DNA of 64,000 nt from Asterias rubens (taxonomy: Eukaryota): assembly GCF_902459465.1 (NCBI RefSeq), contig NC_047063.1, positions 930,001 through 994,000 of the forward strand. The letters run 5' to 3'. Every line of letters begins with the position of its first letter. Positions within the stretch are counted from its first letter, which is position 1. Made by a program: the position numbers and the translations under genes. This document shows positions 22,323-47,060 of the stretch, piece after piece. The notes beneath the pieces are model-generated. The model had not been told where the DNA came from. It saw nothing but the letters and a program-made list of their open reading frames with translations, and searched no databases.

Positions 22323-23710
22323 GTTCAAGCAACTGTTTCAAAATGAAAATGTTTTTTGTTAGTGTAAATGTTGGCAGTCTTTCAGTATTTCAAGTTTTGC
22401 TATGAATCAGCATTATGAACTGCTTTATTATCAACATCTGAGTTTTTAGTTGACCTGATTACGACTTTTAAGCGAGGCCACTGGTGTCAAATACAGCATG
22501 TGGGTGATAATATGCAGACTGCAGACAATTGGACTGCTGGCCTTGATACAAGTAGGAATGTGGCGCAATCATTCAAACGTAGGGAATTCCCCTATGATGA
22601 ATAAAAACAATTTGCCTGTGAACAGCTGTTTAAATGAAAATGCTCTGTAACATGCATGCCATCTCAAAGCAATCTCAAATTGTACTATTTATAAATGAGA
22701 ATGATACTGATTTCTAAGAGTTTACTACACTTGCCCTGTCTGTTTGTGACTCATACATTATGCTACTGTGTTATGCAGACTACATTTAAGCCATGCTAAT
22801 GTTGTCTTGTAGTGTTGTATTGTCAGACTTAAAAGGGACTTCCCCAAACATGAGAAATTCAGATTTTGCAATAACAGGCCCCTGGCCCAAGTCCTAAGAG
22901 CACAATAAACTAGCTATGTATAACAACACAATGTTTTTACAAATAATGGTGGCCAGCCAAAATACATTAATTTCAACGTCCTCTTGTGCAGCGTTATCCT
23001 GCTCGTTTATGCTAGGAAGAAAAATCATTTAGTAAAAACTTTTGGCTTTGGCAGCTGATACCTAGTAGGCAGAGGGTTCATAACATGACACTACTTACAC
23101 GAACACCAACACAAAATTGTGCGCTTTGGCCCTGCTAATGGCTTTATAAGAAGTACATACCCTTACTATAAATGGACCCTTCTGATCAGAGGGATATTAT
23201 AAATTTGTTGCGTATGAATGAGCTGTGTGGCTGAATTGTATGCACTCAGTCTTGAAGCATTATCAAATCTTCAAACTTGTTAGCTTTATAGACTGCTTCT
23301 CAGCATTTTATTTTGTAAAATTTGACTTGTTTTACCATTTATGGGGATACACACCTATGTTTTTCTAGGTACTTACATGTATGTTCTGACATTCTTAATG
23401 TATTTTCCTCGCCCTACTCACCCTAACCCTAGTGTGAAAGTCAGAGCTCAGAGCAGTCACCATTGTATGATTGTCTTCTGACTATAGGTAATAATAAAGA
23501 AGAGCTGCGTTAGTCTGATCGAAAAAACAAGGAAATGGCACTTAGTTACAGCAAAACTGCAAAAGCTTTTGCAGCGACAACTGCTTTATCAGATGCAACA
23601 AAGGAGACAAGCAAGTACTATGCAAGAAAGATACGAGTGAATTCAATTAAGGGTGTATGTAGTCCAACATGTACAGCCAATCAACGTAGGTCTCCCCCCC
23701 CCCCAGTCTG

Positions 23711-23973
23711 ATTTCGCAATACTTCTAATATTAGCAGCTTGGTTTTAACTGAATGTGTCATTGTGTTAGGTAATGGGGAAAATCCCGCCACATAGCCTAC
23801 CCTAGAAATGAGAAATTTGCCAGCTACTAGAGGGCTATATAAACAAAACACAGACGTGGCCTAGAGTCAGTGTAGTATTTTTGTCAACCAGAAAGGAAGA
23901 CTGCCAATGAGGGTAGAAAGAAATGTTCTGCAACTGAGATTCTCAAACTGTTGCCGATTACATTTGAGTGGAG
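23711..23973 (+). promoter_or_regulatory. Paralogue A promoter and non-coding exon 1 (C/EBP + kB + TATA)
   Basis: ATTTCGCAAT 23711-23720, GGGGAAAATCCC 23775-23786, TGAGAAAT 23809-23816, TATATAAA 23836-23843, donor GAG|GTAAGA at 23973. Confidence 0.7.
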
Positions 23974-24058
23974 GTAAGATTCATTTTTTTAATATAAAAT
24001 ATGTTTCTTTAAGATTAATCCAGGCCTGCTTACTGCATCCATGGCCCTGGTCATAGAC

Positions 24059-24227
24059 AACAATGGTGTCACTCGACAATGATGTCTTTTGACTATGGTG
24101 TCATTTGACATTTGACTATTGTGTAATTTGACTATGGTGTCATTGACAACGGTGTCATTTGACTATGCTGTCATTTGACTATGCTGTCATTCTACAATGG
24201 TGTCTTTTGACTATGCTGTCATTTGAG
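24059..24227. repeat. ~16-bp minisatellite in intron 1 of paralogue A
   Basis: Units of GGTGTCATTTGACTAT with variants. Confidence 0.85.
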
Positions 24228-25812
24228 TTGTGTATGATTTCGTTTGAGTAGGCCACCTTGCAAAAAGTATTGCTGAACCTGATTGCTTGTAACGTGACAG
24301 TGCATAGAATGTTTTTATGAACTGAGACAATTGATTTATTGAACAGCAGTACTTAACTGTATTTCATTTTACAGACATGATATTTGGTCCTTGGACAAAG
24401 TGGGAATATTTCATCTAGTACAAAGGCTGACCACCATTATCACATGGTACTTTTAAATACATTTCACAGTTTTTCAGAAATGTTCAAGGGCAAAAAAAGT
24501 TGGAAATGAGACTAAAAAAGGAAAAACATCATGCCTCATTTTACCTTATTTTATGCATGGCTTCAACAGGCATGCCAGCCAGTAGCTGGGGCTGGGTACT
24601 AGCTTTAACTTATGTCATACCCTTGGAATTTTGTGTATCAATCTGCAAGACCAACCTGGCATTATACGACCAAGTTGGCAGAGTTTTGCATGATTGGTCA
24701 TGGAAAATGTTGTGTTCGGTTATTAGACCAATAGGAGTACTCAATTTGTTTTCTGGCCTGTGAGAAGGTGCAACAAATTGAGAAACAATTCTCATTTGGG
24801 TTTTGTAGCTTCTGTGGTTAGGCATGCCCATGCAGATGACTCATATTGTAATTGAGTCATGATTGTATGATCGGGGATTTTTGGCCAGTTCATTTGGGAA
24901 TAATCAACTCAATGGAACTTTTAAGCTGTGAGAGATTAATGCACAATATTTTTTTGTTTTCTGAAAAGTTTTCTGGTTTGAAATGAGTTTGGGGGAAAAA
25001 AAGGGTTTTAAGCTTTATGAATAATAAATAATAATAACTCTTGTATAGCGCATTTCACAATAACTGTATCAATGCGCTTTACATTAGTGCCCTGGTCATA
25101 GGGCCAATAACATCCCTTTTAATGTTTCTCAGCTCCCTTGGGAGTATATAACCTGGGCAACCATACATATCGCTCCATAGGCTTTTTCATTCACAATATC
25201 AACCTCTACCCTCGCAGGTACCCATTTATACCTCTGGGTGAAGAGAAGCAATCATAGTAAAGTGTCTTGCTCAAGGATACAAGCATCACTACCGGGATTC
25301 AAACCCGCACTCTGATGACTTGAATTTGATGCTCTTAATCGGCCATGACACTCTAGGCTTAAGCTTTGTATGCATTGTAGTGCGTAACAGTGAAAAGCAC
25401 TACCTCGAATGAAACAAAGTGTTACTACTTTTATGCAAAGTAGTTAGTATACTGTAAGAGGGCATTGTAAATTGTTCATTAATAGTTCACCACAACCTGT
25501 TTCTGCTAAAGTCTACATTTTCACATTTTACCTTTACAAAATTGAACCCAGAGCTATCTATTTATTTTAAATAGTCCCATTCCTTATTTTGTTAATTTAC
25601 TTACTAGGTAGTACTTACTTTTGTGTGTGTTTTGATGGTGGTTTGTTCACATCTCTTTGTAAATTTTAATATAGCCTCCAATGGCGTTATTTTTTTTATA
25701 TAAACTTACTGTATATTTTTTGTATGTAACTATTTTGTATGTAAACCTTTTTATATGTATTGTGATTTTTAATGTAATTTGGCCGTTGGCCATGAATGTA
25801 AAAAGAAATAAA

Positions 25813-25847
<35 letters not shown>

Positions 25848-25930
25848 AACATATTGTATTTAATGTTACTCTGTAAAAGAACCAAGTTTCTCTCTAAACC
25901 TTTGTTCTTCTTTCTGCATTTATAGGTTAG

Positions 25931-28900
25931 ATGGTTTCAACCATGGCGGAAAATGACAGCAAAAAGTGTGGCCTGAACTGGGTTGATGCTGTGGATAGTT
26001 TTGTCCTTAGTTTATCTGTCTTGTTGGTTGGCGTGAGTGGCCTGTTGATTTCTTACAGCATTGATCAATTAGTCATTGGTATTGTTGTTTGCATTGGATT
26101 GCTGATACTGATTGGTCTCCTTCGGTTAATTTACTTTTGTAAATCAAACAGCAACAGCAGTACCGGTAAACATCTCTTCAATGTCATCATTATCTGCATC
26201 CGTTTATGGTGTAGCGGTGTTCTTGGTCTGATGTCTTTTGTAGATATCAGTGACATCCAAAATGATTGGAAAACTGCAATAACATGGATGCTGGTTGCAA
26301 GCATTATCATCAAAGCTGTCTCTTCATTTATCCAGCGACGTCTTGGATTGATTAAATACTCCCCAAGTCCAGTGACTTGGGCTGAGGTGTTAGAGCTTGT
26401 TGGTTTCTCGGTGACTGGATTATTAGTTATTTTGCCAGAGGACAAGACACTTTTTTCCATATATGCTGTCTGCTTGATTTTGGTTTCCTTTGCTGTCATT
26501 ATTGTAGCAGTAAGACTTGTACCTTGCAACCCCTCCGTCATTTTCATTTTGTTTGCAGTTCTTTTTTGTCAAGGTGTTTTTTTCATTACTGTTGATGTAC
26601 CTTTCTTCGATGCTGCATTGGTTTGCTTCGCTGGCCGCCTGTTTATGGACCCTCTCTCTGATTTGTTTTCTAGAAACATATCCATCAATGAGAGACTGAA
26701 TTGTGTATTCCTGAGTATACCTGGATGTTTGCAAAAGGTGTTCATAATAATAGTCATTGTGTTTGAGAGTGTCTTTCTTTTTCATGCTGGAGTTTTTGAT
26801 ATCTACCATCAAGAATGGTACTGGATAATGATCTTTGTTTTCCTACTTTTGCTTTGGATTTGCTACCATTCATATTCCATTCATTTGTACTGGAAACTCT
26901 CCAACAAAATCTCAGAGTGCACTAAGGCCCATAAAACCTTGCAGGGAAAAGCTAGCATGGAGAAAATGATGGCAGCAAAGGGGATGCGTTTACAAGCTCA
27001 GTTTGCGCACTGTCTCGCCTTCTATACATTTGGCTCCACTGTCCTACTTGGTGTAGTTACACTGTTGATTCCAGATGGAGATCAACCATGGCATAAAGAC
27101 GAAAAAGCAGCAGTTGCAGCAAGCTTTTTGACAGTGGTTCTTGTAGAGGGAATGTTCTATGCAGCCACAGATACACTCCGGAAGTCCCTACCAGGGACTT
27201 GTACAGCTTGTGTCATCATGCCTCCTTCAACGTCCCATAGGTAAGAATTACAAAAACTAAACAACTATTCTAAAGTCATCATCTCATACCAAGTATTGAG
27301 TGCAATGAAGAAGAGTAACCTCACTTGTGAGGAGTTATTGCATCTTTGGTGGAATTGTGTTGATGAATTTGGGGTAAAATAAAAATAACCAAAATATTTT
27401 GACCTGTGACCAATTCGCCCAATTTCGCCCAATATCGTCCCAATAATCTTTGTTGTGGCATTTGGGAGTCAATGTTCCTGTGTGTTACAGTGTAGCACAT
27501 TATTTAGGCACCACAACATTGCAAAGTGTCAGACATTAGTTGTGTGTGACATTTTGTGCAAGGAACCAATACTCAGAGAGTACATCAGAATAAATTTATA
27601 GGTTATGGATTCACAACTATTGACAATCGCTAATAACTAAAACACAGACAGTACTACTAATAAATATCTGACTGAGAAAGAATTTGTTGCTGAGGTCACA
27701 AAGGAATAAAATGAAAGGCCTCAGAGCTCAGCAGTACACTGCTGGCATTTTATTGCAGGCTGCTCTTCCATGACAACAAAAATAATAATAGCCAAATCAA
27801 AGCACTGGTTCTCCACAGCCTTTTGGTTGAATATTTTGTGTCACTGGCTGTCACTTCATATGTAAGCTTTTAATGTTTTCTTTCTATATGTAAATATAGA
27901 CAGTTGAACGAGTTGCGGAGATCAATTATGGATTTCTGTGATCGTAATGCTATACCTTGTAGCATTGAATCCTTCGTGGATGGGCTTTCAATCCAAACCC
28001 TAGAGGGCAAGCTTAATGGCTTCTTTGCTCAGACAAATCCTGCTACTAGTCAGCGGAGGTATGACAGCTACTTGGTTTTCTACTGTGGTGATGTAGATAG
28101 AGATGGCAAGTGGGAGTTGACAGGAGGTTAGTTTGATTTTATTTCATTAGGTTTTATGATTTTTCTTACATTAATGTTATTGTTTTATGTAGTATTGTGG
28201 TATAACTTGTGCAATTTTACATTTTAATATTTTACATGTTGCTGTACAATAGGATTGTAAATTTCATGTATTTTTGTATACCTGATGAATAAACCGTTCA
28301 ATTCAATTCAATCCAATTCAATTCAATTCAATTCAATTCAATTCATTTCAATTCAATGAAAAAACTTTCTGGGTAAAAAAACGGTGTTTGTGGCAAGTAC
28401 TTTAAGCAACTACCAAGTCAGCCAAGTAAACAAAGGTGACAAAGTAGCCCTTGAGTATCTGAGAACTAAAAGAACTAAAAGTTGTGGCAGAGCGATTAAG
28501 AGCATGGAACTCAAGTTCTGGTGGTTAAGTCAAAGGAGTATGGGTTCGAATCCCGGTCGTGACACTTGTGTCCTTGAGCAAGATACTTTACTCTCTTCAC
28601 CCAGGGGTATAAATTGGTACCTGTGAGGGTAGAGGTTCATACTGTGTTCGAAATAGCCTTCTGAGCGCACGGCTGTATACTCCTCGGGAGCTGAGAAAGA
28701 TTAAAGAAATGTTATTGGCCTAATAATGACCAGGGTACTAATGTAAAACATATTGATACGGTTCTTGTAAAATGCGCTATAAGAACTAGTTGTTATTATT
28801 ATTATTATTAAAGGACACTAGTATCCAAGCACCAAGTCCATCATTGATACCTAAGGACTTTGATCTCCCGAGTGTGAGTACTGTATAAAACCATTACTGG

Positions 28901-29796
28901 TTACTTGCAGCCAACCAATCGGTTTGGCAGGCTGGACTCAAGCTGTTGTGTTTCTGACCAGGACACTATGAGTCCAGGTACAGATAGACATGTTCTTTAT
29001 TAGCAAGACACCTAACAATTACTGCTTGGATGGGATCTAAGCCGTAGGTCCCTTTTGTGTTTTGTTCCACATGTTTAAGAACCCAATACACTTTATCTCT
29101 GACCACCATTAAGGGAAGTTTGTTAACCCATTGTACGGGTATACAGATACAGACGTTAGAGTATTGTCAGTCAATGGCAAAAAACCTTTGAATTGAATAG
29201 TGCACTTGGTTTTTACAGTCACGCTAAAAAATGCTTCCATTATTTTTGTCGTCTCTTCAACAGGAAAGTTCAAGTTTGAAAACATGCAACGGCTATGGAA
29301 TAACTGCAATACTGAGGGATTCCAATCTAGGCTTATCTTGATCCAAGATGCAAAACACTCCAAAGACTGGCTGGAGAAGATCGCCAATGATGAAAACAAC
29401 GTAGTTGCAATACAAACTTGCAAACTGAGTCCATCAGTAGACCCTGAAACTGGGGTTGTGCCAAGGGTTGGGGATTTTACCCGTGATTGGGTAGAGTTTA
29501 ATAGCTCAACTGAAAACAGTATCAATTGGAAGGAGACGGGGAGAAAAATCAAAGCAGTTTATAAAGTTTCTCCTCCATGGAGTGACAATGAATTCCGAGT
29601 GCCTAGTGAAGAAGATATGACAGAGTTCACCTCAAAGTTCCCCGTTAAATTGCAATGTTTGATAACAATTGCTTTGGAGATAGCTGAATTTAAAGAAAAA
29701 ACCATTTGCCCTACCTGTTGGAAACGTTTTATGATGAGTTGGTTTCCCCCACCTTTTATTGATACTAGACATGGCTTTAAGCTAGTTAAATCTTGA
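25931..29796 (+). CDS. Diverged TMEM168-like paralogue A, 689 aa (685 aa from Kozak ATG at 25943)
   Basis: Exons 25931-27240, 27900-28126, 29264-29796 (2070 nt), same intron phases as the parent. Retains MAAKGMR, RRYDSYLVFYCGD, GDFTRDWVEFN and RHGFKLVKS*. Non-coding first exon ends at donor 23973. Confidence 0.88.
28486..28770 (+). mobile_element. tRNA-derived SINE
   Basis: TGGCAGAGCGATTAAGAGC...GGGTTCGAATCCCGGTCGTGACACTTGTGTCCTTGAGCAAG; ends in a (TTA)n tail near 28795. Confidence 0.7.
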
Positions 29797-30115: not shown

Positions 30116-30244
30116 TTATGTCATGAGAAAGATAACATTTGGTTAATAAAGGGCTATCGTAGATTTGAATAAAAAACAAAGCATGAGTACAATAATCAGA
30201 AGTTTTCAGAATGGTCAAATTGGCTTGCATTGCTTGTTACACAA

Positions 30245-31762
30245 CCTACATTTTTCTAACTAATCTGTAATGACCCAATAGCTTAATTTGGCCTGTTGCT
30301 TTAGACTCAAATTCTGGATTATGTGCCAAACTCTTGGCTTGTATCATCAAAGGCACACATCTACTTGCCCTACTTTTGTAATTAGACATTTGTTGTTATA
30401 TTTTGAGTAACTATTATGTAACATGTAGTTTCTATTTAAAATGATTGATTGGGGGAAACAAATTAAGAAGACAATTTTAGAGTAACAGGAGATGTTTTAG
30501 AGATGTACACGATAAACCTCCACCCCCTGCTATATCACTTGCCACTTAAGTCTCTGTGTTATGTTATGTGAATTACTTAATGACCATACTAAATCAGCAC
30601 ATCAAAATAAGCACCAAACAAAATGCCTGACAAAAACATGAAACTGTTTTCATTAATAAAAAATAAAAAAAGTAACTTCTACAATTTAATGACGTAATTA
30701 GACCTAAAGGTTGATTGTATGACGTGTGTCTTGACCAAGAGGGTTAGTGGATTTACGCATCCCAAAACCAAAGAAACATTTTAGATTTATAGTAACAATG
30801 CAGTAAGTAATTTGTAATTATTGATGCTTTTTGATTTTTCATTTAAAGCTTCCTGAGAGTATTTTTGTAAATGATTCAATGCTGTATAAATGCACCTTGG
30901 GTTTTTATTTTTGTACAAAATAATATCCGAACAGTTTTCATTAATAAGGCCTATGGCTGTGGGCTGCAGCTACAGTGTGTTCAAGAATCCCTGTGAGTTT
31001 AGTGATACCAAATACACTACGCATGCCAAGGGCCTCTGAACAAGGGCCTCTCCAATCAAAACAATGAGCCAACAGTCATAACAAAATTGAACTATCTGCA
31101 CCAATCAGAAACAATTAACTGTCAAAAGGAAAGCACTGTTTGCAAAGTATTAAAAAAAATTGTTTACATCGAAGACAATATTTCAGAGTGTCTGTATAGA
31201 TTTCAATAATAAATAAAGAAAATAGAGGTTAAAAAAATGGACTAAAAAAACAATCTCTTCATCTCAGGAGCCTGTTTTTTCCCCTTCTGAATGCAAGAAT
31301 TGGAAAACAAATGCATTTGAACATGAATCAAAATGAATGCAGTCTTCAAAACTTTGCTATAGTATAGTATCTAAATTATAAACCCTGCTTTTCAAGAATA
31401 CAATTTATGCTGATTGTGTCAATACCATGTTGGTTCCCTCTTGCAAAAATAAATAAAAACATTATTTTGTATTTCATTATCTATAAAATAGCTATCAGAT
31501 AGTAAGTTTGACATTGATGTAACTAAAAATGCATATTGCGGGATGAAGTATTTAAAATGCAGACTGTTGTACTTGGTACATGTAGGAATGAGAAGCAATT
31601 GTTCAAAGGTATAAGGAATTCCCCTATGTTTAATAAAATAATTTTGCTTGTGAACAGCTGATGTTTTAAAAGTGAAAAGTCCTTGTAGTATTGTATTTCT
31701 CAGAGGTAAAACGGAGACAAAGTCCACTGGCCAAAGTTGATTAAAGACACTGGACACTATTG
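30245..31762 (+). repeat. 1.5-kb near-identical segmental duplication, copy 1
   Basis: Matches 40426-41942 with only scattered substitutions and small indels. Confidence 0.92.
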
Positions 31763-32071: not shown

Positions 32072-32778
32072 GCAACAAAGTATCTATGTTTACCAATATA
32101 ATGTTACCTTGCCATGCCAGGAGCTTATTTTTGCTGGGAAGAAAGAAAAAAAACATTTAGTAAAACGTTTGGCTTGGGCAGCTTTATGACACCTAGTGGG
32201 CAGGGCTCAATACCATGGTGTTGCAAATACTAACACCTAATACTTAAATCTCACAGTGCTCTTAGACCCTGCTAGTTGTTTTGTTAGGAGAAACACAGCC
32301 AAACAAAACCAAACCCTTGTAATCAGAGGCTCAGGTAATAATGTATTGTTAATGTATTGTTAATGCAATGTATTGCGTATGAACTCAATCATGAGCTACA
32401 ATGACTGAATTGTATGCACGCAGTCTTGAAACCTATCAAATTTTAAAACAATTTTATTTATAACTGCTTTTCAACATTTAATTTTGCTACTTTTCATCTG
32501 TTTGTTGCCTGCGCTTAAAGCATCAATACCATTTATGTAGATACACACCTATGTTGTGACATTCCTTATGTGTTTTCCTTACCCTAACCAAACCTTATTG
32601 TGTAGGTCAGAGGGGCTATTAAAACATAGGGTCGTTGGAGCTTATAGGGGTCTGACTTTGGGGCGTAGTCACCAATAATGTGTGTGCTTGCGTGCTGACT
32701 ACACGTACAGCCAGTCAATGGATGAATAGTGTGATGCAGTGTAGCGCTGAAATGATAAAGGGACTCCTCCAGAGTATG

Positions 32779-33007
32779 ATTTCGCAACAAGGAGCTGTGT
32801 GGAGTGTGTAATGGGGAAATTCCCTGACACGTAGCCAGATATGAGAAATTTGCCAGCCCCTAGATCGCTATACAAACAAAGCACAAACTTGACCTAGAGC
32901 CAGTGTGGTATTTCTGTCATACAGAGAGGACCGCTGCTAATGAAAGGGTGAAATAAACCTTCTGCAACTGAGCTTCGCAAACCGTTGTTGTTGATTACAT
33001 TGTGGAG
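32779..33007 (+). promoter_or_regulatory. Paralogue B promoter and non-coding exon 1 (C/EBP + kB + TATA-like)
   Basis: ATTTCGCAAC 32779-32788, GGGGAAATTCCC 32813-32824, TGAGAAAT 32842-32849, TATACAAA 32869-32876, donor GAG|GTATGT at 33007. Same motif order as paralogue A. Confidence 0.7.
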
Positions 33008-33425: not shown

Positions 33426-34518
33426 CATTTACAAGGCCTGCAACACTGCATCCGTGCCCGCTGGCTATAGACCTTTTGCATTTTAGATACATGCATGAAT
33501 TCATTTGAGATAAGGCCCCCTTGCAAAATACATATTGCTGAACATGGAACGCTGCCATGGGAACAGAAACAGAAAATGTGTACAATACGTTTAATGAACT
33601 GTGACAGTGATTTATTGGAAATCAACTGTATTTCATTTTACTTGTGAACTGCATTATGCATGACTTTATTATCTGGCTGTATCTTTTGTAGCTTTCAATA
33701 ATGTAATTCGGTACCCTTGGAATTTTGTGTCAAACGAAACTAGGCATAGTGTCTGAAGTTGGCGGGGTTATACCTGATGGTCAGCAAAATGTTGTGTTCG
33801 GGTAATGGACCAATGACAAAAATGTTGGCCCCTTAAGGGGCCAATATTTTTTTTATGTTTAACTTTTGCTAGGTTAGAATTAGCATTATCTGTTGCCCGG
33901 GTGCCTTGTTTTATTTTTGTGTATAAATGGGACAGCGAACAAAGGGCCAGTTCTTGAGGCTAAGGCAAAAATCAACTCAATACTGTTCAGCTGTGCGAGG
34001 TTAGTGCACAATTATATTTTTCACGTTGAACAGTTTTCTGGTTTTAAATGAGTTTGAAAGGAAAGAGTTTAGTTGCGTAAAAAAAACATCAAATTTGCCT
34101 AACTGATGTGATCATTTATTTATCGTGTGAGTGTAATGCACACGCCATTGTAGTGTGTGGCAATGAAAGGCACAACCATCATTACAATGAAACAATGTTT
34201 GACTTTTAGGCACAATTGTTTAGTACTGCCTGTCTCTGTTTTGCAAACAGGAGAGGGCGCTATAAGTAGTTTATCACAACCTGTTTCTGCTAAGCAGCAC
34301 ATTCTGTGCTAAGCAAATTTTCACATAACACCTTTACAAAATGGAAGTCGGAGCTATCTCACTGGGTTTCATTTGTTGTCCTAAAAACTGAGTCTCTTTC
34401 TAAACCTTTGTTTTTCTTTTTTCATTTATAGGTTAAAGATTAACGGCTCGTCAATTCTAAAAAGTGATCAAATCTTCCATCTTTTAGTCTGAGCAACTGT
34501 TATTAGCTGGTTTCAACC

Positions 34519-35822
34519 ATGGAGGAAAATGACAGCAAAGTGAAATGTGGCCTGTGCTTCGTTGTTTTGGACTTAATTGTCCTTATATTTGCATTGGAGG
34601 TCGGCTTGTGTGCCCTGTTGATTTCTACCAGAATTGGTCCAATATTCATTGTTATTGTTGCTTTGATTGTGATTGGACTAGCAATAGTGATTGGAGTCTG
34701 CCTATACTGTTGTAAACCAAACTACAAAGGCAACGACAGTCTCTCAAAGGAGGTCAATATGTGCAACCGTTTATGGTGTAGCTTTGTTCTTGGTCTGATG
34801 TCTTTTGTAGATATCAGTGGCATCCACAACTATGTTATTACTGTAACAACATGGATGCTGGTTGCAAGCATTATCATCAAAGCTGTCTCTTCATTTATCC
34901 AGCGATGTCATGGATTGATCAAATACTCCTCCAGTCCAGTGAGTGAGGTTGAGATGTTTGAGCTCTTTGTGTTCTCAATGACTGGATTGATTGCTTTGCC
35001 AGAGGACCAGGCATTTCTTTCTAAATATGCTTTATGCTTGATTTTTGTTTCCTTTGCTGTCATTATAGTGGCAGTCAGACTTGCAGGTTGCATTTACAAC
35101 CCCTTCAAAATACTCATTTTGATTGCAGTCCTTGTTTGTCAAATAGTATTTTTCAATACTATTGATGTGCCTTTCTACAATGCTGCATTGGGTTGCTTTG
35201 TAGGCCGCCTGTTTATGGACCCACTTTTTGATTTGTTTTCTAGCAACATAACTGCAATTGAAAGATTGAATTGTGTATTCAGTGTCCGTGAATGTTTACA
35301 ACAGATGTTTGTGATAATAGTCATTGTGTTTGAGGGTGTCTTCCTTTTTCATGCTGTAGTTTCTGACATCTACCACAAAGAATGGTACTGGATAATTCTC
35401 TTTGTTGTCCTACTTATATTTTGGATTTGCAACCATTCATATTCCATTCATTTGTTCTGGCAATTTTCCAACAATATCTCAGAGTGCACTAAGGCCCATC
35501 AAGCCTTGCAGAACAATACTAGTATGGAGATGATAATGGCAACGAAAGGGATGCGCTCACAAACTCAGTTTATACACCATCTCGCCCTCTATACATTTGT
35601 TTCCACTTTATTTCTTGGTGCAGCCACACTGTTGATTCCATGTGTGGTGCACCAATGGCATAAAGAGGACAAGGCGGCACTTGCAGCAAGCTTTTTGATA
35701 GTGGTTCTTGTAGAGGAAATGTTCTATGCAGCCACAGATTTACTCCAGCAGTCCCTACCAGGGGCTTGTACAGCTTGTGTCATCATGCCTCCTTCAAAGT
35801 CACAAAGGTAAGAATTGAGACC

Positions 35823-35853
<31 letters not shown>

Positions 35854-38800
35854 GTGGTGATTTGAAATCTGTACATGTTTAGAAATTGTGAAGTTATCCT
35901 CTCAGACCAACAGTCATTTCATGTGTTTATGAATTATGGGTAAAATATAAATGTTGACCTGCATTTACAAACAACAAAATTGACCGAATTCACTGATGTC
36001 ATCATCCAAATAATCTTGGTTTCATCTTCTTTGGATTCAATGTCCATGTGTGTTATTAAGTGTAGTGCTTTAAGCATTATGGTTACACGCAATTATTCCA
36101 AATGCCGAGCGTACCAGACACCAGCCCTGTATGGCATTGGTGCAAGAAGCCAATTTACTCAAAAAGTACATTTAAAGCACATAAATAAAATATTTAGTTT
36201 ACCCTTATGTTACCCTTATGTAGCCTTGCTAAAGGCACATGCATTATTCATTCCGAAAAAGGCGCCATTGTAAACCCACCTGTATGCACTGTGCGTAGTG
36301 TGTGTAATCACACCACACGAAATCACACCGCACGACCCACCCGTATACACTGTCACATGACTCAACGCCCGCCCCGTAAGACTACTGTACTTAAGTCATC
36401 AGCACTTGACCTTTATTTTGAGGCCGTCAGATGGACAGCCTTGTCGGGTCTGTAACTTCCAGGTTTAATGTGTTTCATGAAAAAAATTCAAATATTTGAA
36501 AAAAAGGGGGGGGGGCCTCTGGGATATGCTAGTAAGCAGCTCATGAATATTTATATCTTTCGTCAGACCTATCAAACAACACAGGATGTGAAGCAAATGA
36601 ACTATTCATTTTGATGCCCAATCAAGCACTTGCCTTATCACGACCTTTGGACCCTATCATGCTCGCTGAGCGTCCGTGGTGATGCGATGTAAACAAGACA
36701 TCCGCAACTGACCAATGGGGTCTCGTCTTTTGCAGGCATTATGGTAATGAGTTGACCGTAGGAACTCTTCTTTTGCGCTTATTATAGTATTGAGTCATTA
36801 GCTTCAACACAGACCCTACAAGGCTGTTGGCCTGACTGCCTCCGTATGGGGATAGTGTATGGGGGGCTTCGTGTCGTGCGATGTGATTACACACATTACG
36901 CACAGGTAAACGGGTGGATTTTTACAGCAGTGGTCTTTTTCTGAGTAAATAATTTGACTGCCTTGAGCAAGAATAACCCTTATGCCAAGTGTAGGTGTAT
37001 AGTCAGTACTTTCCTGTATTGTGTGAAGAAAATCGCAGACATTAATTACTCGAGTGGGATTCAAACCCCACAACCTTTGCCAATCTAGAGCAGATGTCAT
37101 ACCATGCTAGAGCACCAAAATTGCCCAGTAGCTAAAGGCAGTTTGAATCTTATACTTGAGCAGTGGGTACCACAACAAATTTAAAAGATGTTAAATCTGC
37201 ATCAGGGATACAGTATATCATTTGGTTTTACCCTTACACCAATGGTTTGCACAGAACTCTGGAAAGTACCGAGTATACAGTGCTGACACACATCAGTGAA
37301 AGGATAAAACCAATATTATTTCTTATCCCTAAAGCAAATTTATCACATAAATTTTTAAGTGATGGTATAAATGCAGCTGTTCACAACTGTTGATAGAAAG
37401 TGATAATTAAATACAGACAGTTAACACTTGCCTAAGAAAGTATAACCATTTGTAGAAGTGGGGGTCATGGAGCAAGTAAATGAAAGGCCTCAGAGCTCAG
37501 CGGTACACTGCTGGCATTTTATTGCAGGCTGCTCTTCCATGACAAGACAAATAATAATAGCTAAACCAAAGCACTGGTTCTCCACAGCCATTGGTTGAAT
37601 ATTTTGTGTCACTGGCTGTCACTTCATATATATGTGTAAGTTTTTAATGTGTTCTTTCTTTGTGCAAATACAGACAGTCAGAGTTAAAAGATTTGCAGAG
37701 ATTCATCATGGAGTTCTTTGGTAAAAATAATATACCTTGTAGCATTGAATCCTTCGTGGATGGGCTTTCAATCCAAACCCTGGAATGCAAGATTCAGTAC
37801 TTCTTTGCTCAGACAACTGATACCAGTCATCGGAGGTATGACAGCTACGTGGTTTTCTACTGTGGTGATGTAGATAGTGATGGCAACTGGGAATTAACAG
37901 GAGGTTAGTTTGATTTCATTCTGCCAGCTTTCATTAAAAAAACCATTTCTGCGTAAAAAACATTGTTTGTGGTCAATTTTCTTCAAAATCAACTACAAAG
38001 TACTCAAGGTGACAAAGTAGTATTCGAGCTGTAGTTCTCTTCCATGTTTTTAAAACTTGCTGAAAACTCCACATACACTTATCTTGTAACATTTCTTAGA
38101 TTATTCATTGTATTAATGTCTTTGTATTCCATATTTCTCATTTGTTGTTTAAATAGTTTTTTTTTTTTTTTTTCTGCCCTCTCGGAATAGGGTCTTGTAC
38201 ACTAGATAGATAGCACATTATATTATGCATTATTGTTATTATTATACAAGAATAAGGAAATCCAAGCACCAAGTCCAACAGCCATGTATCCATGTACCTT
38301 TGATCTCCAAGCACAAGTACAATTAAGTATGAGGACTGTATAAAGGGTGTACAGAAAACGTTTGTCAGTAAGTAACAATTAATGTATGTGCTTATAAATT
38401 TATTAAAATGATTACATCTTTGGTGTATCATGGCCTAGTGCTTTTGCACTGGACTTCAAGCTCTGGTGTTTCTGACCAGCACACTATTGAGTATAGGGCC
38501 AGACAGCTTTGTTCTTAAGCAAGACACATCTATACCACTATTGCTTCGTCCTTTGGATGGGTTGTTAGCCATTGGCTCCTTTGTGTTTTGTAATACATAT
38601 TAATACCCTTTTTTTTCAAAAAAAGATAAAGACAGAAGAGTATTGTCAGTACATTGTTAAAATCCTGAACTTTTATTGTCTCTTCAACAGGAAAGTTCAA
38701 GTTTGAAAACATGCAAAGACTATGGAATAACTGTGATACTGAGGGATTCCAATCTAGGCTTATCTTGATCCAAGATGCAAAACACTCAGAAGACTGGCTG

Positions 38801-39220
38801 GAAAAAATCGCACACAACAAAAACAACAGAATTGCAATGCAAACTTGCAAACTGAGTCCATCAGTAGACCCTGAAACTGGGGTTGTGGCAAGAGTTGGGG
38901 ATTTTACCCGTGATTGGGTAGAGTTTAACAGCTCAACTGAAAACAGTATCAATTGGAAGGAGAGTGGGAGGGAAATCAAAGCAGTTTATAAAGTTTCTCC
39001 TCCATGGAGTGACCATGATTTCCACGTGCCTAATGAAGAAGATATCAGAGAGTTCGCCACCAAGTTTCCAAAAATAATGACTTTTCTGATATCAAGTAAT
39101 TTGTATGCAACCCAATTTGAAAGAAAACATTGCTTTCCCTGTTGGGAACGTTTAATGATGAGTTGGTATCCCCCGCCTTCTGTTGATACTGGACATGGCT
39201 TTAAGCTAGTTAAGTCTTGA
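34519..39220 (+). CDS. Diverged TMEM168-like paralogue B, 682 aa
   Basis: Exons 34519-35807, 37674-37903, 38691-39220 (2049 nt), in phase and stop-free. Clearly closer to paralogue A than to the parent; ends DTGHGFKLVKS*. Non-coding first exon ends at donor 33007; acceptor at 34432. Confidence 0.88.
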
Positions 39221-40425: not shown

Positions 40426-41942
40426 CCTATATTTTTTCTAACTAATCTGTAATGACCCAATAGTTAAATGTGGCCCGAACTCAAAATCTGGATTCTTGTG
40501 CCAAACTCTTGGCTTGTATCATCAAAGGCACACATCTACTTGCCCTACTTTTGTAATTAGACATTTGTTGTTTTATTTTGAGTAACTATTATGTAACATG
40601 TAGTTTCTATTTAAAATGATTGATTGGGGGAAACAAATTAAGAAGACAATTGTAGAGTAACAGGAGATGTGTTAGAGATGTACACGATAAACCTCCACCC
40701 CCTGCTATATCACTTGCCACTTAAGTCTCTGTGTTATGTTATGTGAATTACTTAATGACCATACTAAATCAGCACATCAAAATGAGCACCAAACAAAATG
40801 CCTGACAAAAACATGAAACTGTTTTCATTAATAAAAAATAAAAAAAGTAACTTCTACAATTTAATGACGTAATTAGACCTAAAGGTTGATTGTATGACGC
40901 GTGTCTTGACCAAGAGGGTTAGTGGATTTACGCATCCCAAAACCAAAGAAACATTTTAGATTTATAGTAACAATGCAGTAAGTAATTTGTAATTATTGAT
41001 GCTTTTTGATTTTTCATTTAAAGCTTCCTGAGAGTATTTTTGTAAATGATTCAATGCTGTATAAATGCACTTTGGGTTTTTATTTTTGTACAAACTAATT
41101 TCCGTACAGTTTTCATTAATAAGGCCTATGGCTGTGGGCTGCAGCTACAGTGTGTTCAAGAATCCCTGTGAGTTTAGTGATACCAAATATACTACGCATG
41201 CCAAGGGCCTCTGAACAAGGGCCTCTCCAATCAAAACAATAAGCCAACAGTCATAACAAAATTGAACTATTTGCACCAATCAGAAACAATTAACTGTCAA
41301 AAGGAAAGCACTGTTTGCAAAGTATTAAACAAAAATGTTTACATCGAAGACAATATTTCATCAGAGTGTCTGTATAGATTTCAATAATAAATAAAGAAAA
41401 TAGACGTTAAAAAAATGGACTAAAAAAACAATCTCTTCATCTCAGGAGCCTGTTTTTTTTCCCCTTCTGAATGCAGGAATTGGAGAACAAATGCATTTGA
41501 ACATGAATCAAAATGAATGCAGTCTTCAAAACTTTGCTATAGTATAGTATCTAAATTATAAACCCTGCTTTTCAAGAATACAATTTATGCTGGTTGTGTC
41601 AATACCATGTTGGTTCCCTCTTGCAAAAATAAATAAAAACATTATTTTGTATTTCATTATCTATAAAATAGCTATCAGATAGTAAGTTTGACATTGATGT
41701 AACTAAAAATGCATATTGCGGGATGAAGTATTTAAAATGCAGACTGTTGTACTTGGTACATGTAGGAATGAGAAGCAATTGTTCAAAGGTATAAGGAATT
41801 CCCCTATGTTTAATAAAATAATTTTGCTTGTGAACAGCTGATGTTTTAAAAGTGAAAAGTCCTTGTAGTATTGTATTTCTCAGAGGTAAAACGGAGACAA
41901 AATCCACTGGCCAAAGTTGATTAAAGACACTGGACACTATTG
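40426..41942 (+). repeat. 1.5-kb near-identical segmental duplication, copy 2
   Basis: Matches 30245-31762. Confidence 0.92.
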
Positions 41943-42105
41943 GGTCAACAAAAACATGGGTGTGCATAAACCTTTTGTTAATGCACACTAAAGCTCTGTT
42001 TATAACAAGCTGGCTTCCGCGTGTCGGGCATGCAAGATTATCATGCGGAACACTGGTTTTAAAGCGCACTGTTTACACCAATCAAAAACAATAAGCCCCA
42101 ATCAT

Positions 42106-43662: not shown

Positions 43663-43968
43663 ATCTCATTTTTGGTTTTGTATACTAGTTAATTGATTTT
43701 ATCTCATATTTTGTATCACAAAGTATGCCATTCCCAAGCACATACAATTATCATCATCAAAAGGTACATTAAACTAAAATGATTGGCAGAATGAAAATCT
43801 TGCTTTTGAGATTGTCTTTAAAGTTTGAATACTTGGGACACCTACTTAGTCATCCCAGGAGATCGAGACTGCAGATGTTTACATTCATGTGTGAGTGTGC
43901 TAATATGTAGAGTGTAGTGAATGCCCACATGTCAATAGAAGGTCAAGCATTGTTTTCCTTTACGTAGA

Positions 43969-44283
43969 GGTAATTCCCCACAGATGAGAAATCTAATTTT
44001 GCAATAATTTTGTCTGGAGGTAGCGGTTGCTTCCCCCTAAAATGGGAAATCTGATTTCGCAATCATTTTTTTTGTATCTGTTCAAAAGGGAAACGTAAGG
44101 AGGTAAATCCCCAATACGTAGTGAGAAATGAGAAATTGTGAGCTTATATAGGCTATGTATACAACACAAAGGGCCATTTGGTGCAGCAGTCTGACGGAAC
44201 GGATCACTGCAATTGAAGCTGAGAGGAAGAAAGGTTCTGCTGCTTAGACTTTTGAGCTTTTACCATTAATGATTTATGTGAAG
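43969..44283 (+). promoter_or_regulatory. Paralogue C promoter and non-coding exon 1 (two kB-like and several C/EBP-like sites)
   Basis: GGTAATTCCCC 43969-43979, TGAGAAAT 43985, TTTTGCAAT 43997, ATTTCGCAAT 44054-44063, GGTAAATCCCC 44102-44112, TGAGAAATGAGAAAT 44122-44136, TATATA 44145-44150, donor AAG|GTAAGG at 44283. Confidence 0.6.
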
Positions 44284-45073
44284 GTAAGGTCTCTTTTGTG
44301 TTTAAATACATTTGTTTGTGTAGTGTTAAATGTTAGGTTCATAGATTGTATTTTTGTCAATGTATTGCTGATTTAAATTATACGCAAATACAGCTTAAGT
44401 CACATGTGAAAGGTTTCAGCAGTGTTTTTGCTTGCTGATAAAAGAGCAAAATAAATGGTATTTATGAACAACTCAAGTCCCTTCACGTTTAGCGAGGTGA
44501 CAGCAGGTACCAACCTCATATTTGACTGCGTCATTCATGAACACCAACCCTCAGAAATCTGAGGTCTCAGTTTCAGATGTTTTGGGTGAAAAAAAATCCC
44601 AACCATATTACTTCGAGGGGAATCTATTCACAATTAATAGTTTGTACAAACATGATAACACTTATTTTGTTAAGAGTGTCATCAATGTATGACCAAGTAC
44701 CTTTCAAGAGTAAAATTAGCTACAATTCTCATTTGTACCATGTTGCCTTTCCATGGCAGTTTTTTGCAACTAAATGTTGTGTAGTTTAAGACAGATATTT
44801 TATGTGATATGGAGCGTTCATGTTGTTGTTAGTATTTTTTTTTTTTTTTAACATATCAAGAAAGCTGCCTAGCAATTGCTCAAAACATGCCTGTCAACAA
44901 TAGACCTTTTGGCTTCTAGCCGGTATGTGAACAAGATAAGGTAAAACAAGAAGGAGGGGAGAAAATTAAACCCTTGCAAAACATGGTTTTCAATCTAATA
45001 AACAAAAAATAAAGGTTGGTTACAATACGTGTGAGAAAAGGGAATATTTATAGACCTCTTGCATAGGTCACTA

Positions 45074-45517
45074 CACTGGGGTCAAACAATGGAACTAAGC
45101 ACCATTTGCACAATGCACATCTCTCAGCCAATGATAGGTCTTCATTTGACCCATGCACAACTCCAATCCAATGATAGGTCTTCATTTAACCCAAGCACAG
45201 CTCCCATCCAATGATAGGTCTTCATTTGACCCAAGCACAACTCCCATCCAATGATAGGTCTTCATTTGACCCATGCACAACTCCCATCCCATGATATGTC
45301 TTCATTTGACCCATGCACAACTCCCATCCAATGATAGGTCTTCATTTGACCCATGCACAACTCCCATCCAATGATAGGTCTTCATTTGACCCAAGCGCAA
45401 CTCCCATCCAATGATAGGTCTTCATTTGACCCAAGCACAACTCTCAGCCAATGATAGGTCTTCATTTAACCCATGCACAACTCCCATCCAATAATAGGTC
45501 TTCATTTGACCCCAGTG
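45074..45517. repeat. 40-bp minisatellite (10 units) bounded by 13-bp inverted repeats
   Basis: Unit CCAATGATAGGTCTTCATTTGACCCATGCACAACTCCCAT from ~45128. CACTGGGGTCAAA at 45074-45086 and TTTGACCCCAGTG at 45505-45517. Confidence 0.85.
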
Positions 45518-45939
45518 AGGACACCTTTTAAACTTGTGATGTCCTCAAGGCTCCATTAATTACTATTTTTAAAATAAACAATTCTGTAATATTCCTTTAA
45601 TTTCAGCCAACAAACTTAAATGCTTAATAATGCAACAACACAGAGACTCACAATCACCACTGCAACCAGCCAGCTGTTTCTTGTAAGCAAGATAGTCTTA
45701 GCTTAGCAAATTTCTCCACAAAAGCTTAGGAATTTATGTCTGGATCAAGTTTCACATTCATTGATGTGTTCATGATTTAAAAAATGTATCTTCCCTCTAA
45801 AACTATATTTTCTCTGTCTTTTATCACAGGTTGATGGTTCTTCTAATCTAAAGGCGGAGCAGATCTTCTAAACTTTGGTGAACTCTACTAACTTTGCAAT
45901 CAGAGGAACTGCTATTCTCGACCAGTTTGTCTACCTGCC

Positions 45940-47060
45940 ATGGCCAAAATGAGGTGTGAACACTTGTTTGATGTCATAGACTATAATGTCCTAGGAGCTG
46001 CCCTGGTTTTCAGCTTGAGTGCCCTGTTGCACTCAAATAGCATCAGTAAACTATTCTTTGGTATTGTGGTTTCCGTTGGATCGCTGATTGATGTCACTTT
46101 CGTCTTAACAAGCTGTACAAAACCAGACTCCAAAGGAATCAACTGTTTCTCTCGTCTCTTCAGTGTCGACATTATCTTCATCCAGATATGGTGTAGCTGT
46201 GTTCTTGGTCTGATGTCTTGTGTAGATATCAGTGGCATCCAGAATGATTTTATAACTGCAATAACATGGATGCTGGTTGCAAGCATTGGCGTCAAAGCCA
46301 TCTGGTCATTTATGCAGCGATGTCTTGGGTTGATCAAATACTCCACTAGACCAATTTTGATGGTCGAACTATTAGAGCTTGTTGGGTTCTTAGTGCCAGG
46401 TTTAATTCTTTTGCCCGAGGATCATGCATTTTTGTCAAAATATGCTTTATTCTTGATTTTGTTTTTTTTTGGGTTTCACTGTTGTGGCGTTCAGACTTAT
46501 AACTCTCTCATACAACGGTATTCCCATTTTCATATTGATTGTAATAACTGTTTGTTGTCAAGTCGGCCTATATATCTATTTCAACAGTAGTTTTGGTGTA
46601 CATAATGCTGCGTTATGCTGTTTTACTTATCGTCTACTGATCGACCCAGTCTTTGATTTACTGTTCAGAAAACCATCCAGAGAATCTCCATCGAAGATTG
46701 TGATCAACCAATAACTCCATTCACCATAACAAATGGTATTGGACCATCCTCTTTGTTTTCTTGCCTTTGTGTATATTTTTTACCTGCATTCATATTTAAC
46801 TCATTTGCTGGGGATTGTACAACAAAATCTTAGAGTACAAGGAAACCTGACAGGCTGTGGTAGAGGACAATGGACAAGATAATGGCAAAAGGGGGATGTG
46901 GCAAACTGTTTTGGCAGTGATGAATGTAAAGTGTTGCAGCATCACATGAACTCCAGAAACCCCTGAGAAGAGTCTGCAATTTTATCCGAGATTCGAAAGA
47001 GATTAACTTCTCAAATGAAAACAGTATCAATTGAAAGAAAAGAGGGGAGAAAATTAAGAC
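45940..47060 (+). pseudogene. TMEM168-like pseudogene (paralogue C)
   Basis: Acceptor at 45830 and ATG at 45940. TMEM168-like TM segments (IQIWCSCVLGLMSCVDISGIQND...ELLELVGF), frameshift in the T run near 46460-46470, homology continuing in another frame (NAALCCFTYRLLIDPVFDLLF), then stops and deletions. Exon-4-like sequence (GAAAACAGTATCAATT at 47017) follows exon-2-like sequence directly. Confidence 0.82.

What the first reader, a model, noticed from the sequence alone, without database searches (positions are those of the whole stretch)
22561..47060. Candidate NF-kB/C-EBP-inducible family of diverged TMEM168 membrane-pseudocaspase genes
Seen: next to a conserved TMEM168 on a shared bidirectional promoter, three tandem derived copies each carry the same module upstream of a non-coding first exon (C/EBP-type site, kB site, TGAGAAAT, TATA-like box). 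The two intact copies are strongly diverged in protein yet keep exon phases and the GFKLVKS tail. Established: adjacent kB and C/EBP sites with a TATA box typify inducible innate-immune/acute-phase promoters (IL-6, IL-8, SAA type), and TMEM168 is, to my knowledge, normally single-copy. Inference: a housekeeping membrane protein was duplicated, rewired to immune signalling and is evolving by birth-and-death, i.e. a possibly undescribed invertebrate immune receptor/effector family.
Basis: partly seen in the sequence, partly recalled or inferred. Interest (0 to 1): 0.85.

Follow-up and report, generated by a model that had tools for sequence, protein, structure and literature searches.

The report
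Fast-evolving TMEM168 gene copies in sea stars
Next to the conserved TMEM168 gene, the sea star Asterias carries a tandem set of expressed, very fast-evolving TMEM168 copies that have their own promoter with NF-kB-like and C/EBP-like sites, which makes them plausible but untested stimulus-inducible (perhaps immune) genes.

Summary
The window is Asterias rubens. Canonical TMEM168 (13790-17572) is followed by two intact paralogues (25931-29796 and 34519-39220) and a truncated third copy (about 45940-47060).

- **Gene structure:** all copies keep the three coding exons, the exon phases and the GHGFKLVKS tail.
- **Promoter:** each copy has a homologous promoter upstream of a non-coding first exon, with a C/EBP-like site, a kB site, an ATGAGAAAT box and a TATA-like box. 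RNA contigs confirm the 5'UTR intron and all coding introns of copy 1.
- **Not an artefact:** the array has the same order in A. amurensis.
- **Selection:** between the two species the parent is 99% identical in protein (dN/dS about 0.06). The copies are 92% and 85% identical (dN/dS 0.7-0.9). Their reading frames are nonetheless kept, and the core of the C-terminal domain is under purifying selection.
- **Fold:** that domain has a caspase fold, but no Cys or His is conserved anywhere in the TMEM168 family.
- **Parental side:** no kB consensus lies upstream of the parent gene.

Immune inducibility rests only on motif matches and could not be tested. The shared bidirectional promoter was not verified. 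The scan also noted, unchecked, a similar NF-kB + C/EBP module at a deaminase cluster on another piece of this genome.

The parts
13790..17572 (+). Canonical (parental) TMEM168, three coding exons 13790-15060, 15680-15954, 17022-17572; 698 aa
   Evidence: 99% identical to A. amurensis TMEM168-like, 76% to Patiria, 49% to Saccoglossus; dN/dS 0.06-0.085 between Asterias species
22532..22640 (+). Distal upstream element of unit 1 with TGGCGCAAT (22561-22569) and kB GGGAATTCCC (22582-22591); homologous to 31562-31678 and 41742-41858
22835..22872 (+). Distal composite: kB GGGACTTCCC, ATGAGAAAT, GATTTTGCAAT in 38 nt; a similar composite lies at 43965-44005 upstream of copy 3
23708..23845 (+). Copy 1 proximal promoter: C/EBP-like GATTTCGCAAT 23710-23720, kB 23775-23786, TGAGAAAT 23809-23816, TATATAAA 23836-23843
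23868..23973 (+). Copy 1 non-coding exon 1 (5' end approximate), donor after 23973
   Evidence: RNA contig joint 23973|25926 in three runs; an X8 contig reaches about 98 nt upstream of the donor
25926..29796 (+). Copy 1 coding part: exon 2 25926-27240 (ATG 25931, or the homologous ATG 25943), exon 3 27900-28126, exon 4 29264-29796 (stop); 689 aa
   Evidence: Spliced model; joints 27240|27900 and 28126|29264 seen in RNA contigs; NCBI partial model P0012 matches exactly
31562..31678 (+). Distal upstream element of unit 2 (kB GGGGAATTCC 31615-31624)
32778..33007 (+). Copy 2 promoter and non-coding exon 1: GATTTCGCAAC 32778-32788, kB 32813-32824, TGAGAAAT 32842-32849, TATACAAA 32869-32876, donor after 33007
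   Evidence: exon 1 assigned by homology to copy 1
34507..39220 (+). Copy 2 coding part: exon 2 about 34507-35807 (ATG 34519), exon 3 37674-37903, exon 4 38691-39220; 682 aa
   Evidence: Identical to NCBI A. rubens protein P0011; copy-2-specific letters in an RNA contig of run X8
41742..41858 (+). Distal upstream element of unit 3; part of a 1.5 kb block (40423-41943) 97-99% identical to 30242-31763 and present only once in A. amurensis
43965..44283 (+). Copy 3 promoter and exon 1: composite 43965-44005, GATTTCGCAAT 44053-44063, kB-like GGTAAATCCCC 44102-44112, TGAGAAATGAGAAAT 44122-44136, TATA-like 44145-44162, donor after 44283
45940..47057 (+). Copy 3, truncated: reading frame from 45940 cut to 216 aa by a 1-nt frameshift near 46445-46465; rest of the big exon to about 46900 fused to a relic of the last exon (46968-47057)
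   Evidence: the same truncation keeps an intact 257-aa frame in A. amurensis, in P0013 and in a third genome (L003)
52387..52474 (+). 88-nt relic of the large TMEM168-like exon (86-90% to copies 1-3)

Best explanation
This is a sea-star-lineage subfamily of TMEM168 paralogues made by tandem duplication of whole 9-10 kb gene units beside the conserved parent.

Shown: each unit has a TATA-type promoter with kB and C/EBP consensus sites and an ATGAGAAAT box, a short non-coding first exon, a roughly 2 kb 5'UTR intron, and the same three coding exons as the parent. The proteins keep the full TMEM168 architecture. That is about 12 membrane helices followed by a C-terminal domain with a caspase fold in which no Cys or His is conserved, so it is read as a non-catalytic scaffold. 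Copies 1 and 2 are transcribed, correctly spliced and kept open by selection. Their membrane part changes at nearly the neutral rate while the core of the caspase-like domain stays constrained.

Inferred: transcription is driven or boosted by Rel/NF-kB and C/EBP factors. The copies would then be stimulus-inducible versions of a housekeeping membrane protein, possibly acting in immune or stress responses. The family turns over by birth and death, as shown by a truncated third copy, a small relic and a species-specific block duplication.
For: - **Identity and gene models:**
- **Whole-unit tandem duplication:** colinear matches in promoter, introns, exons and flanks.
- **Same order in a second species:** parent, c1, c2, c3 in A. 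amurensis.
- **Tree:** the copies form one clade, sister to asteroid canonical TMEM168 (96/97 support). The stem branch is 1.32 substitutions per site, against about 0.26 for the parent lineage.
- **dN/dS between species:** parent 0.06-0.085, copy 1 0.73-0.93, copy 2 0.66-0.93.
- **dN/dS by region:** membrane part 0.9-0.96, C-terminal part 0.44-0.6, core residues 481-600 about 0.1-0.25.
- **Frames are selected:** the chance of no stop codon under neutral change is 0.057 (c1), 0.001 (c2) and below 1/5000 (c1 vs c2). All 13 indels between c1 and c2 are in frame.
- **Transcription:** three GT..AG joints match the copy 1 model, and introns are uncovered. Copy-2-specific letters occur in an RNA contig.
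- **Promoter:** the motifs are shared by six promoters, and motif blocks are conserved well above the spacers. kB consensus and exact GATTTYGCAAY hits occur only in the array.
- **Fold:** the full-length model matches vertebrate TMEM168 models end to end, TM-score up to 0.84-0.85. The C-terminal domain gives Z 11-12 against caspases-3/6/7, and all top Foldseek hits are clan CD enzymes.
- **No catalytic dyad:** no conserved Cys or His in the domain alignment.
Against: - No expression data under challenge were available, so inducibility and any immune role rest on motif matches alone.
- Copy 1 is detected in most RNA runs of this species that hold the parent. It has baseline expression.
- One RNA contig of a related species (run X1) runs through the supposed promoter to at least 23748. 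The TATA-defined start is therefore not the only one.
- The TATA box is mutated in A. amurensis copy 1 and weak in A. rubens copy 2.
- Promoter identity between copies 1 and 2 (77%) is no higher than intron or exon identity. The footprint argument depends mainly on copy 3 and on blocks chosen after seeing the alignment.
- dN/dS near 1 in the membrane part fits simple relaxation as well as diversifying selection.
Confidence: 0.6

Rival explanations
1. The copies are functional but not immune genes. They would be tissue-specific, developmental, stress or reproductive paralogues under relaxed constraint, and the kB- and C/EBP-like sequences serve ordinary tissue-specific transcription or are only partly functional.
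For: - Copy 1 is expressed in most available RNA runs without any known challenge.
- dN/dS near 1 in the membrane part needs no positive selection.
- About 35-39% of replacements there are hydrophobic-for-hydrophobic, and the hydropathy profile is kept (r = 0.82 to the parent).
- The TATA box varies between orthologues.
Against: - Clustering of kB consensus sites only in the array.
- Retention of the kB, C/EBP and ATGAGAAAT blocks in all three diverged promoters and both species.
- An unchecked first-reader note reports a similar NF-kB + C/EBP module at a deaminase gene cluster elsewhere in this genome.
Confidence: 0.3
2. The copies are decaying duplicates on the way to becoming pseudogenes, and their transcripts are noise.
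For: - High overall dN/dS of 0.7-0.9.
- Copy 3 is truncated and frameshifted in this assembly.
- NCBI models copy 1 only as a 347-aa partial protein.
Against: - Four intact frames of 682-690 codons across two species.
- A neutral simulation gives a probability of no stop codon of 0.057, 0.001 and below 1/5000. All indels are in frame.
- dN/dS is 0.1-0.25 in the core of the caspase-like domain.
- Splicing is correct in several runs.
- The full-length structure model is confident, pLDDT 84.
Confidence: 0.05
3. The extra copies are haplotype or assembly artefacts.
For: None found. There is a 97-99% identical 1.5 kb block at 30242-31763 and 40423-41943, but it lies between genes.
Against: - The copies differ by 30% in protein from each other and by 60% from the parent.
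- The same order is found in the independent A. amurensis assembly.
- A copy-2-specific transcript contig and a second allele of copy 1 (P0100) exist.
Confidence: 0.01

Closest known systems
Canonical TMEM168 (human Q9H0V1, zebrafish TMEM168-A, echinoderm and hemichordate orthologues)
   Same: - Full-length homology, with the same multi-pass membrane part plus a C-terminal caspase-like domain.
- The same three coding exons and intron phases.
- The same GHGFKLV(R/K)S end.
- The structure model superposes end to end (TM-score 0.84-0.85).
   Different: - Only 38% identical to the neighbouring parent, although parent and hemichordate TMEM168 are 49% identical.
- About 10 times faster protein change between Asterias species.
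- 19 residues are lost at the exon 1/2 boundary, and YYSGH has become FYCGD.
- A different promoter with kB and C/EBP sites.
- Tandem multi-copy arrangement with a truncated member.
Catalytically dead caspase homologues (for example c-FLIP; from general knowledge, c-FLIP transcription is induced by NF-kB)
   Same: A caspase fold without a working Cys-His pair. c-FLIP's protease-like domain is among the top structural hits. Putative NF-kB control is also shared.
   Different: There is no detectable sequence relationship to c-FLIP and there are no death-effector domains. The domain is fused to a roughly 12-helix membrane part. No partner caspase is known, and its function is untested.
Vertebrate inducible promoters with adjacent kB and C/EBP sites and a TATA box (IL-6, IL-8, serum amyloid A; from general knowledge)
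   Same: A C/EBP-type site 35-65 nt upstream of a kB site, and a TATA-like box about 50 nt further downstream.
   Different: Binding and induction are untested in echinoderms. There is an additional conserved ATGAGAAAT box of unknown factor and an ACGTAG block. The TATA box is not conserved in every orthologue.
Fast-evolving tandem immune gene families of echinoderms (for example sea urchin SpTransformer/185-333; from general knowledge)
   Same: Tandem arrangement, rapid protein divergence and gain and loss of members.
   Different: There are only two or three members and no repeat-element mosaic structure. The proteins are multi-pass membrane proteins, not secreted ones. The immune link is unproven.

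Membership tests
TMEM168 family | Significant full-length sequence similarity to TMEM168 proteins | tested here: met
   phmmer with copy 2 gives E = 2.9e-84 to Diadema TMEM168 over residues 8-682. tblastn of A. amurensis, Patiria and S. purpuratus TMEM168 hits all three exons of both copies.
TMEM168 family | Architecture: N-terminal multi-pass membrane part plus C-terminal globular domain ending in GHGFKLV(R/K)S | tested here: met
   The full-length model (pLDDT 84) aligns with vertebrate TMEM168 models at TM-score 0.84-0.85. The tail is conserved. The hydropathy profile correlates with the parent at r = 0.82.
TMEM168 family | Shared gene structure (three coding exons, phases 2 and 2) | tested here: met
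   the copy 1 junctions are seen in RNA contigs
TMEM168 family | One-to-one orthology with the conserved gene | tested here: not met
   The true orthologue lies at 13790-17572. The copies form a separate long-branched clade, so they are paralogues, a derived subfamily.
Caspase-like (clan CD) peptidases | Caspase/hemoglobinase fold | tested here: met
   All top Foldseek PDB hits are metacaspase, caspases, c-FLIP, legumain or MALT1. VIA-align gives Z 11-12 over about 160 residues spanning the whole domain.
Caspase-like (clan CD) peptidases | Catalytic His after the strand ending ...YSG | tested here: not met
   The copies have Asp (FYCGD). In the family the column holds H in 12, P in 8 and D in 3 sequences, so it is not conserved even among canonical proteins.
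Caspase-like (clan CD) peptidases | Catalytic Cys after the strand ending ...D-x | tested here: not met
   No Cys or His column is conserved in the 30-sequence domain alignment. The position two residues after the invariant Asp holds E, K, N, L, A or P. Mapping this position to the active-site Cys rests on strand position and the recalled metacaspase motif, not on a residue-level superposition.
NF-kB / C/EBP co-regulated inducible promoters | kB consensus GGGRNWYYCC near the core promoter | tested here: met
   Copy 1 at 23777-23786 and copy 2 at 32814-32824 match exactly. Copy 3 has one mismatch. Further sites lie at 22582, 22835, 31615 and 41795. There are 9 hits against 3.3 expected, all within the array.
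NF-kB / C/EBP co-regulated inducible promoters | C/EBP-type site T[TG]NNGNAA[TG] next to the kB site | tested here: met
   GATTTYGCAAY matches exactly only at 22862, 23710, 32778 and 44053. It is conserved in all six promoters.
NF-kB / C/EBP co-regulated inducible promoters | Transcription rises on challenge and depends on Rel and C/EBP factors | not testable with these tools
   The sequencing runs are coded and carry no condition labels. No paper mentions these genes.

The most novel reading that the evidence does not exclude
Sea stars of the Asterias lineage evolved a new family of NF-kB/C/EBP-induced membrane-anchored pseudocaspases from the housekeeping gene TMEM168. Their fast-changing membrane part is shaped by conflict with pathogens, and they act as immune sensors or as regulators of cell death and signalling. 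A truncated membrane-only member (copy 3 type, 257 aa) would act as a modulator.
Probability: 0.25. Interest if true: 0.7.

Novelty: new variant of a known kind. Interest (0 to 1): 0.45.

Why it matters
- **TMEM168 function.** TMEM168 is conserved across animals but has no known molecular function. Neither of the two literature searches aimed at this turned up a description of its C-terminal domain as a caspase-fold pseudoenzyme. A natural experiment now exists: the same architecture sits beside its parent, placed under a different promoter and released from most constraint. This shows which parts still matter, namely the core of the caspase-like domain and the C-terminal tail.
- **Echinoderm immunity.** If the kB and C/EBP sites work, the locus would be a compact, testable example of promoter rewiring of a housekeeping gene into an inducible programme in an echinoderm. 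It would also be a candidate marker for sea-star immune or stress responses, including wasting disease.
- **If the sites do not work.** The locus is then an ordinary case of a relaxed lineage-specific duplication.

Tried and rejected
- **Pfam** gave no hit for any exon of the parent or the copies, or for neighbouring minus-strand ORFs.
- **ESM Atlas** feature search of the copy 1 membrane exon gave only weak, unrelated hits.
- **Literature searches** found nothing for TMEM168 in sea stars, 'transmembrane protein 168-like', TMEM168 with metacaspase, Asterias coelomocyte expression studies, or the assembly accession of the third genome.
- **Expression conditions** could not be read because the runs are coded.
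- **Haplotype or assembly artefact** was rejected by synteny in A. amurensis.
- **Pseudogene decay** of copies 1 and 2 was rejected by simulation and by domain-wise dN/dS.
- **Divergent allele in run X8.** A variant contig in X8 turned out to be the copy 2 transcript.
- **Timing of the first duplication** stays open. The tree places it before the Patiria-Asterias split. An origin inside the Asterias lineage is only borderline rejected (AU p = 0.053), and long-branch attraction is possible.
- **The ATGAGAAAT box** was not assigned to a factor. It does not fit the ISRE spacing.
Full report
**What is there**

The window is from the sea star Asterias rubens. My spliced model of copy 2 is identical to NCBI's A. 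rubens 'transmembrane protein 168-like' protein P0011. A 347-aa NCBI model, P0012, is an exact C-terminal part of my copy 1 model.

Guided by the A. amurensis TMEM168-like protein (99% identical to the parent), I obtained three gene models on the + strand:

| Gene | Coding exons | Length |
|---|---|---|
| Parent | 13790-15060, 15680-15954, 17022-17572 | 698 aa |
| Copy 1 | 25931-27240, 27900-28126, 29264-29796 | 689 aa |
| Copy 2 | 34519-35807, 37674-37903, 38691-39220 | 682 aa |

All splice sites are GT..AG. Both introns are in phase 2 in all three genes, and all end in GHGFKLV(R/K)S.

Protein identity is 38-39% between the parent and the copies and 70% between the two copies. The parent is still 49% identical to the hemichordate Saccoglossus protein. 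The copies lack about 19 residues at the exon 1/2 boundary and have FYCGD where the parent has YYSGH.

**Duplication structure**

A self-comparison shows that whole units of 9-10 kb were duplicated in tandem. Colinear matches run through the distal upstream element, promoter, first exon, introns, coding exons and 3' flank.

A third unit carries the promoter and first exon (43965-44283) and a truncated gene body (45940-47057). In it, most of the large exon is fused to a relic of the last exon. An 88-nt relic of the large exon lies at 52387-52474.

**Not an artefact, and older than the genus**

I fetched the syntenic A. amurensis region (loci L002 and L001). It has the same order: parent, copy 1, copy 2, truncated copy 3.

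A contig from a third, more distant genome (L003, assembly GCA_014845345.1, organism not identified) carries a copy-3-type gene. It is 75% identical in DNA and has the same truncation.

In A. amurensis, in protein P0013 and in L003, copy 3 keeps an open frame of about 257 codons that ends at the same stop. In this window a 1-nt shift in a T run near 46445-46465 cuts it to 216 codons. Copy 3 is therefore an old truncated, membrane-only variant that may still be used. The A. rubens reference allele is broken, mis-assembled or polymorphic.

A 1.5 kb block between copies 2 and 3 (40423-41943) is 97-99% identical to the block between copies 1 and 2. It exists only once in A. amurensis, so structural turnover continued after the species split.

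**Phylogeny**

In a maximum-likelihood tree, copies 1 and 2 of both species form one clade. That clade is sister to the canonical asteroid TMEM168 (Patiria + Asterias) with 96/97 support. Its stem is 1.32 substitutions per site, against about 0.26 for the parental lineage.

An origin inside the Asterias lineage is only borderline rejected (AU p = 0.053), and long-branch effects are possible. The duplication is asteroid-specific, but its exact date is open.

A search of 1.84 billion representative proteins found only 88 family members. The only derived-type sequence from outside the two Asterias species was the copy-3-like P0020. Close relatives would be hidden inside the 50% identity clusters.

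**Selection**

Comparison of A. rubens with A. amurensis:

| Gene | Protein identity | dN/dS |
|---|---|---|
| Parent | 99.0% | 0.06-0.085 |
| Copy 1 | 92.2% | 0.73-0.93 |
| Copy 2 | 84.8% | 0.66-0.93 |

By region, the membrane part runs at 0.9-0.96 and the first 120 codons at 1 or above. The C-terminal part runs at 0.44-0.6, and its core (residues 481-600) at about 0.1-0.25.

Random substitution at the observed divergence leaves no stop codon in only 5.7% (copy 1), 0.1% (copy 2) and 0 of 5000 trials (copy 1 vs copy 2). All 13 indels between the copies are in frame. The hydropathy profile is retained, with r = 0.82 to the parent.

The copies are therefore functional genes with a constrained C-terminal core and an almost unconstrained, or diversifying, membrane part. 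With four sequences I cannot separate relaxation from positive selection.

**Transcripts**

I laid contigs of four public runs on 23750-29749. They show these joints:

- 23973|25926 (GT..AG) in three runs
- 27240|27900 in three runs
- 28126|29264 in four runs

Introns are largely uncovered. This confirms the non-coding first exon, its splicing to 5 nt before the ATG, and my coding model.

One contig (run X8) reaches about 98 nt upstream of the donor. That fits a start about 30 nt downstream of TATATAAA (23836-23843). A contig from a related species (run X1) runs on to at least 23748, through the kB site, so an upstream start also exists.

In run X3 the last two exons are far deeper than the large exon. 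This agrees with NCBI's short 347-aa model and hints at a shorter isoform.

A variant contig in X8 carries 17 of 17 copy-2-specific letters, so copy 2 is transcribed too.

Copy 1 is held by most runs of this species that also hold the parent. It is therefore expressed without any known challenge. The conditions of these runs are not given.

**Promoter module**

All three A. rubens promoters and their A. amurensis orthologues share the following blocks, in order:

1. TGATTTYGCAAY, which fits the C/EBP pattern T[TG]NNGNAA[TG]
2. a kB site: GGGGAAAATCCC in copy 1 and GGGGAAATTCCC in copy 2, with one mismatch in copy 3
3. ACGTAG
4. ATGAGAAAT(T)TG
5. a TATA-like box
6. about 105-130 nt of first exon ending GGAG|GT

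Among the paralogues the five blocks are 85-92% identical, against 27-36% for the spacers. The C/EBP-to-kB distance varies. The blocks were chosen after seeing the alignment, which inflates this contrast.

Additional composites (kB, ATGAGAAAT, ATTTTGCAAT within 40 nt) lie at 22835-22872 and 43965-44005. A distal element with GGAATTCCCC lies about 1.2 kb upstream of copies 1 and 2.

In the whole 64 kb window, the kB consensus occurs only between 22.5 and 42 kb (9 hits, 3.3 expected). Exact GATTTYGCAAY occurs only at the four promoter sites.

Caveats:

- The copy 1 vs copy 2 promoter identity (77%) equals that of introns and exons.
- The TATA box is mutated in A. amurensis copy 1 and weak in A. 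rubens copy 2.

The parental gene has an acceptor about 74 nt before its ATG, so it too has an upstream non-coding exon. I could not locate that exon or test the claimed bidirectional promoter.

**Protein fold**

The C-terminal 258 residues of copy 2 give a model with pLDDT 84. All top PDB matches are clan CD enzymes or their dead relatives: the yeast metacaspase Yca1, caspase-11, c-FLIP, legumain and MALT1. VIA-align gives Z 11-12 to caspases-3, -6 and -7 across the whole domain.

No Cys or His is conserved in a 30-sequence alignment of this domain. The His of YYSGH is present in deuterostome TMEM168 but is Pro in many other members. The residue at the expected Cys position is E, K or N. TMEM168 as a whole is thus a membrane-anchored caspase-fold protein without a catalytic pair. 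Loss of His in the copies is therefore not a special event.

The full-length copy 2 model (pLDDT 84) superposes on vertebrate TMEM168 models end to end, with TM-score up to 0.84-0.85.

I found no paper describing TMEM168 as caspase-like, and none on the echinoderm paralogues.

**Verdict**

The regulatory and immune part is a reasonable hypothesis resting on consensus motifs only. I put it at roughly one in three. An unchecked first-reader note reports a similar NF-kB + C/EBP module upstream of six deaminase first exons elsewhere in this genome. If that is true, it would point to a shared inducible programme.

Noticed in passing
window 25013-25321 and 28527-28813: An inverted pair of a repeat element (75% identical) sits in introns 1 and 3 of copy 1. 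RNA contig depth over these stretches is 10^4 or more in all four runs, with joints between opposite strands. It is an abundant, transcribed interspersed repeat.
   Followed up: no
window 45023-45582: A tandem array of about 14 copies of a 40-nt unit (82-92% identical) lies inside the 5'UTR intron of copy 3.
   Followed up: no
window 23907-23973 plus 25926-25930: The copy 1 first exon carries an upstream ATG. After splicing it opens a 23-codon upstream frame that ends at a TAG directly abutting the ATG at 25931. It is not conserved in copy 2 (3 codons) or copy 3.
   Followed up: partly
window 27150-29796 (run X3): In one RNA run the last two exons and the end of the large exon of copy 1 are 10 to 100 times deeper than the rest of the large exon. 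This matches NCBI's 347-aa model, which starts at the internal Met codon at 26957. It may be a short isoform with the last membrane helices plus the caspase-like domain.
   Followed up: partly
window about 38800-38835 (copy 2, homologous to 29376-29404 of copy 1): A. rubens copy 2 carries a cluster of 10 substitutions within 29 nt. They are absent from copy 1 of both species, and most are absent from A. amurensis copy 2. This looks like a complex mutation or a small conversion tract and inflates local dS.
   Followed up: partly
window 35835-37471: About 1.6 kb of intron 2 of copy 2 has no counterpart in A. amurensis, where that intron is only about 180 nt. It is an insertion in A. rubens or a deletion in A. 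amurensis.
   Followed up: no
window 12240-12330: Sequences resembling ETS/GABP sites (TTTCCGG, GACGGGAAGT) lie about 1.5 kb upstream of the parental ATG. This is a possible housekeeping-type promoter for the parent and a minus-strand neighbour. No transcript evidence was obtained.
   Followed up: no
window 12640-12725 and 9780-9835: tRNA-like sequences with a GGTTCGAATCC-type T arm, probably tRNA-derived SINEs.
   Followed up: no
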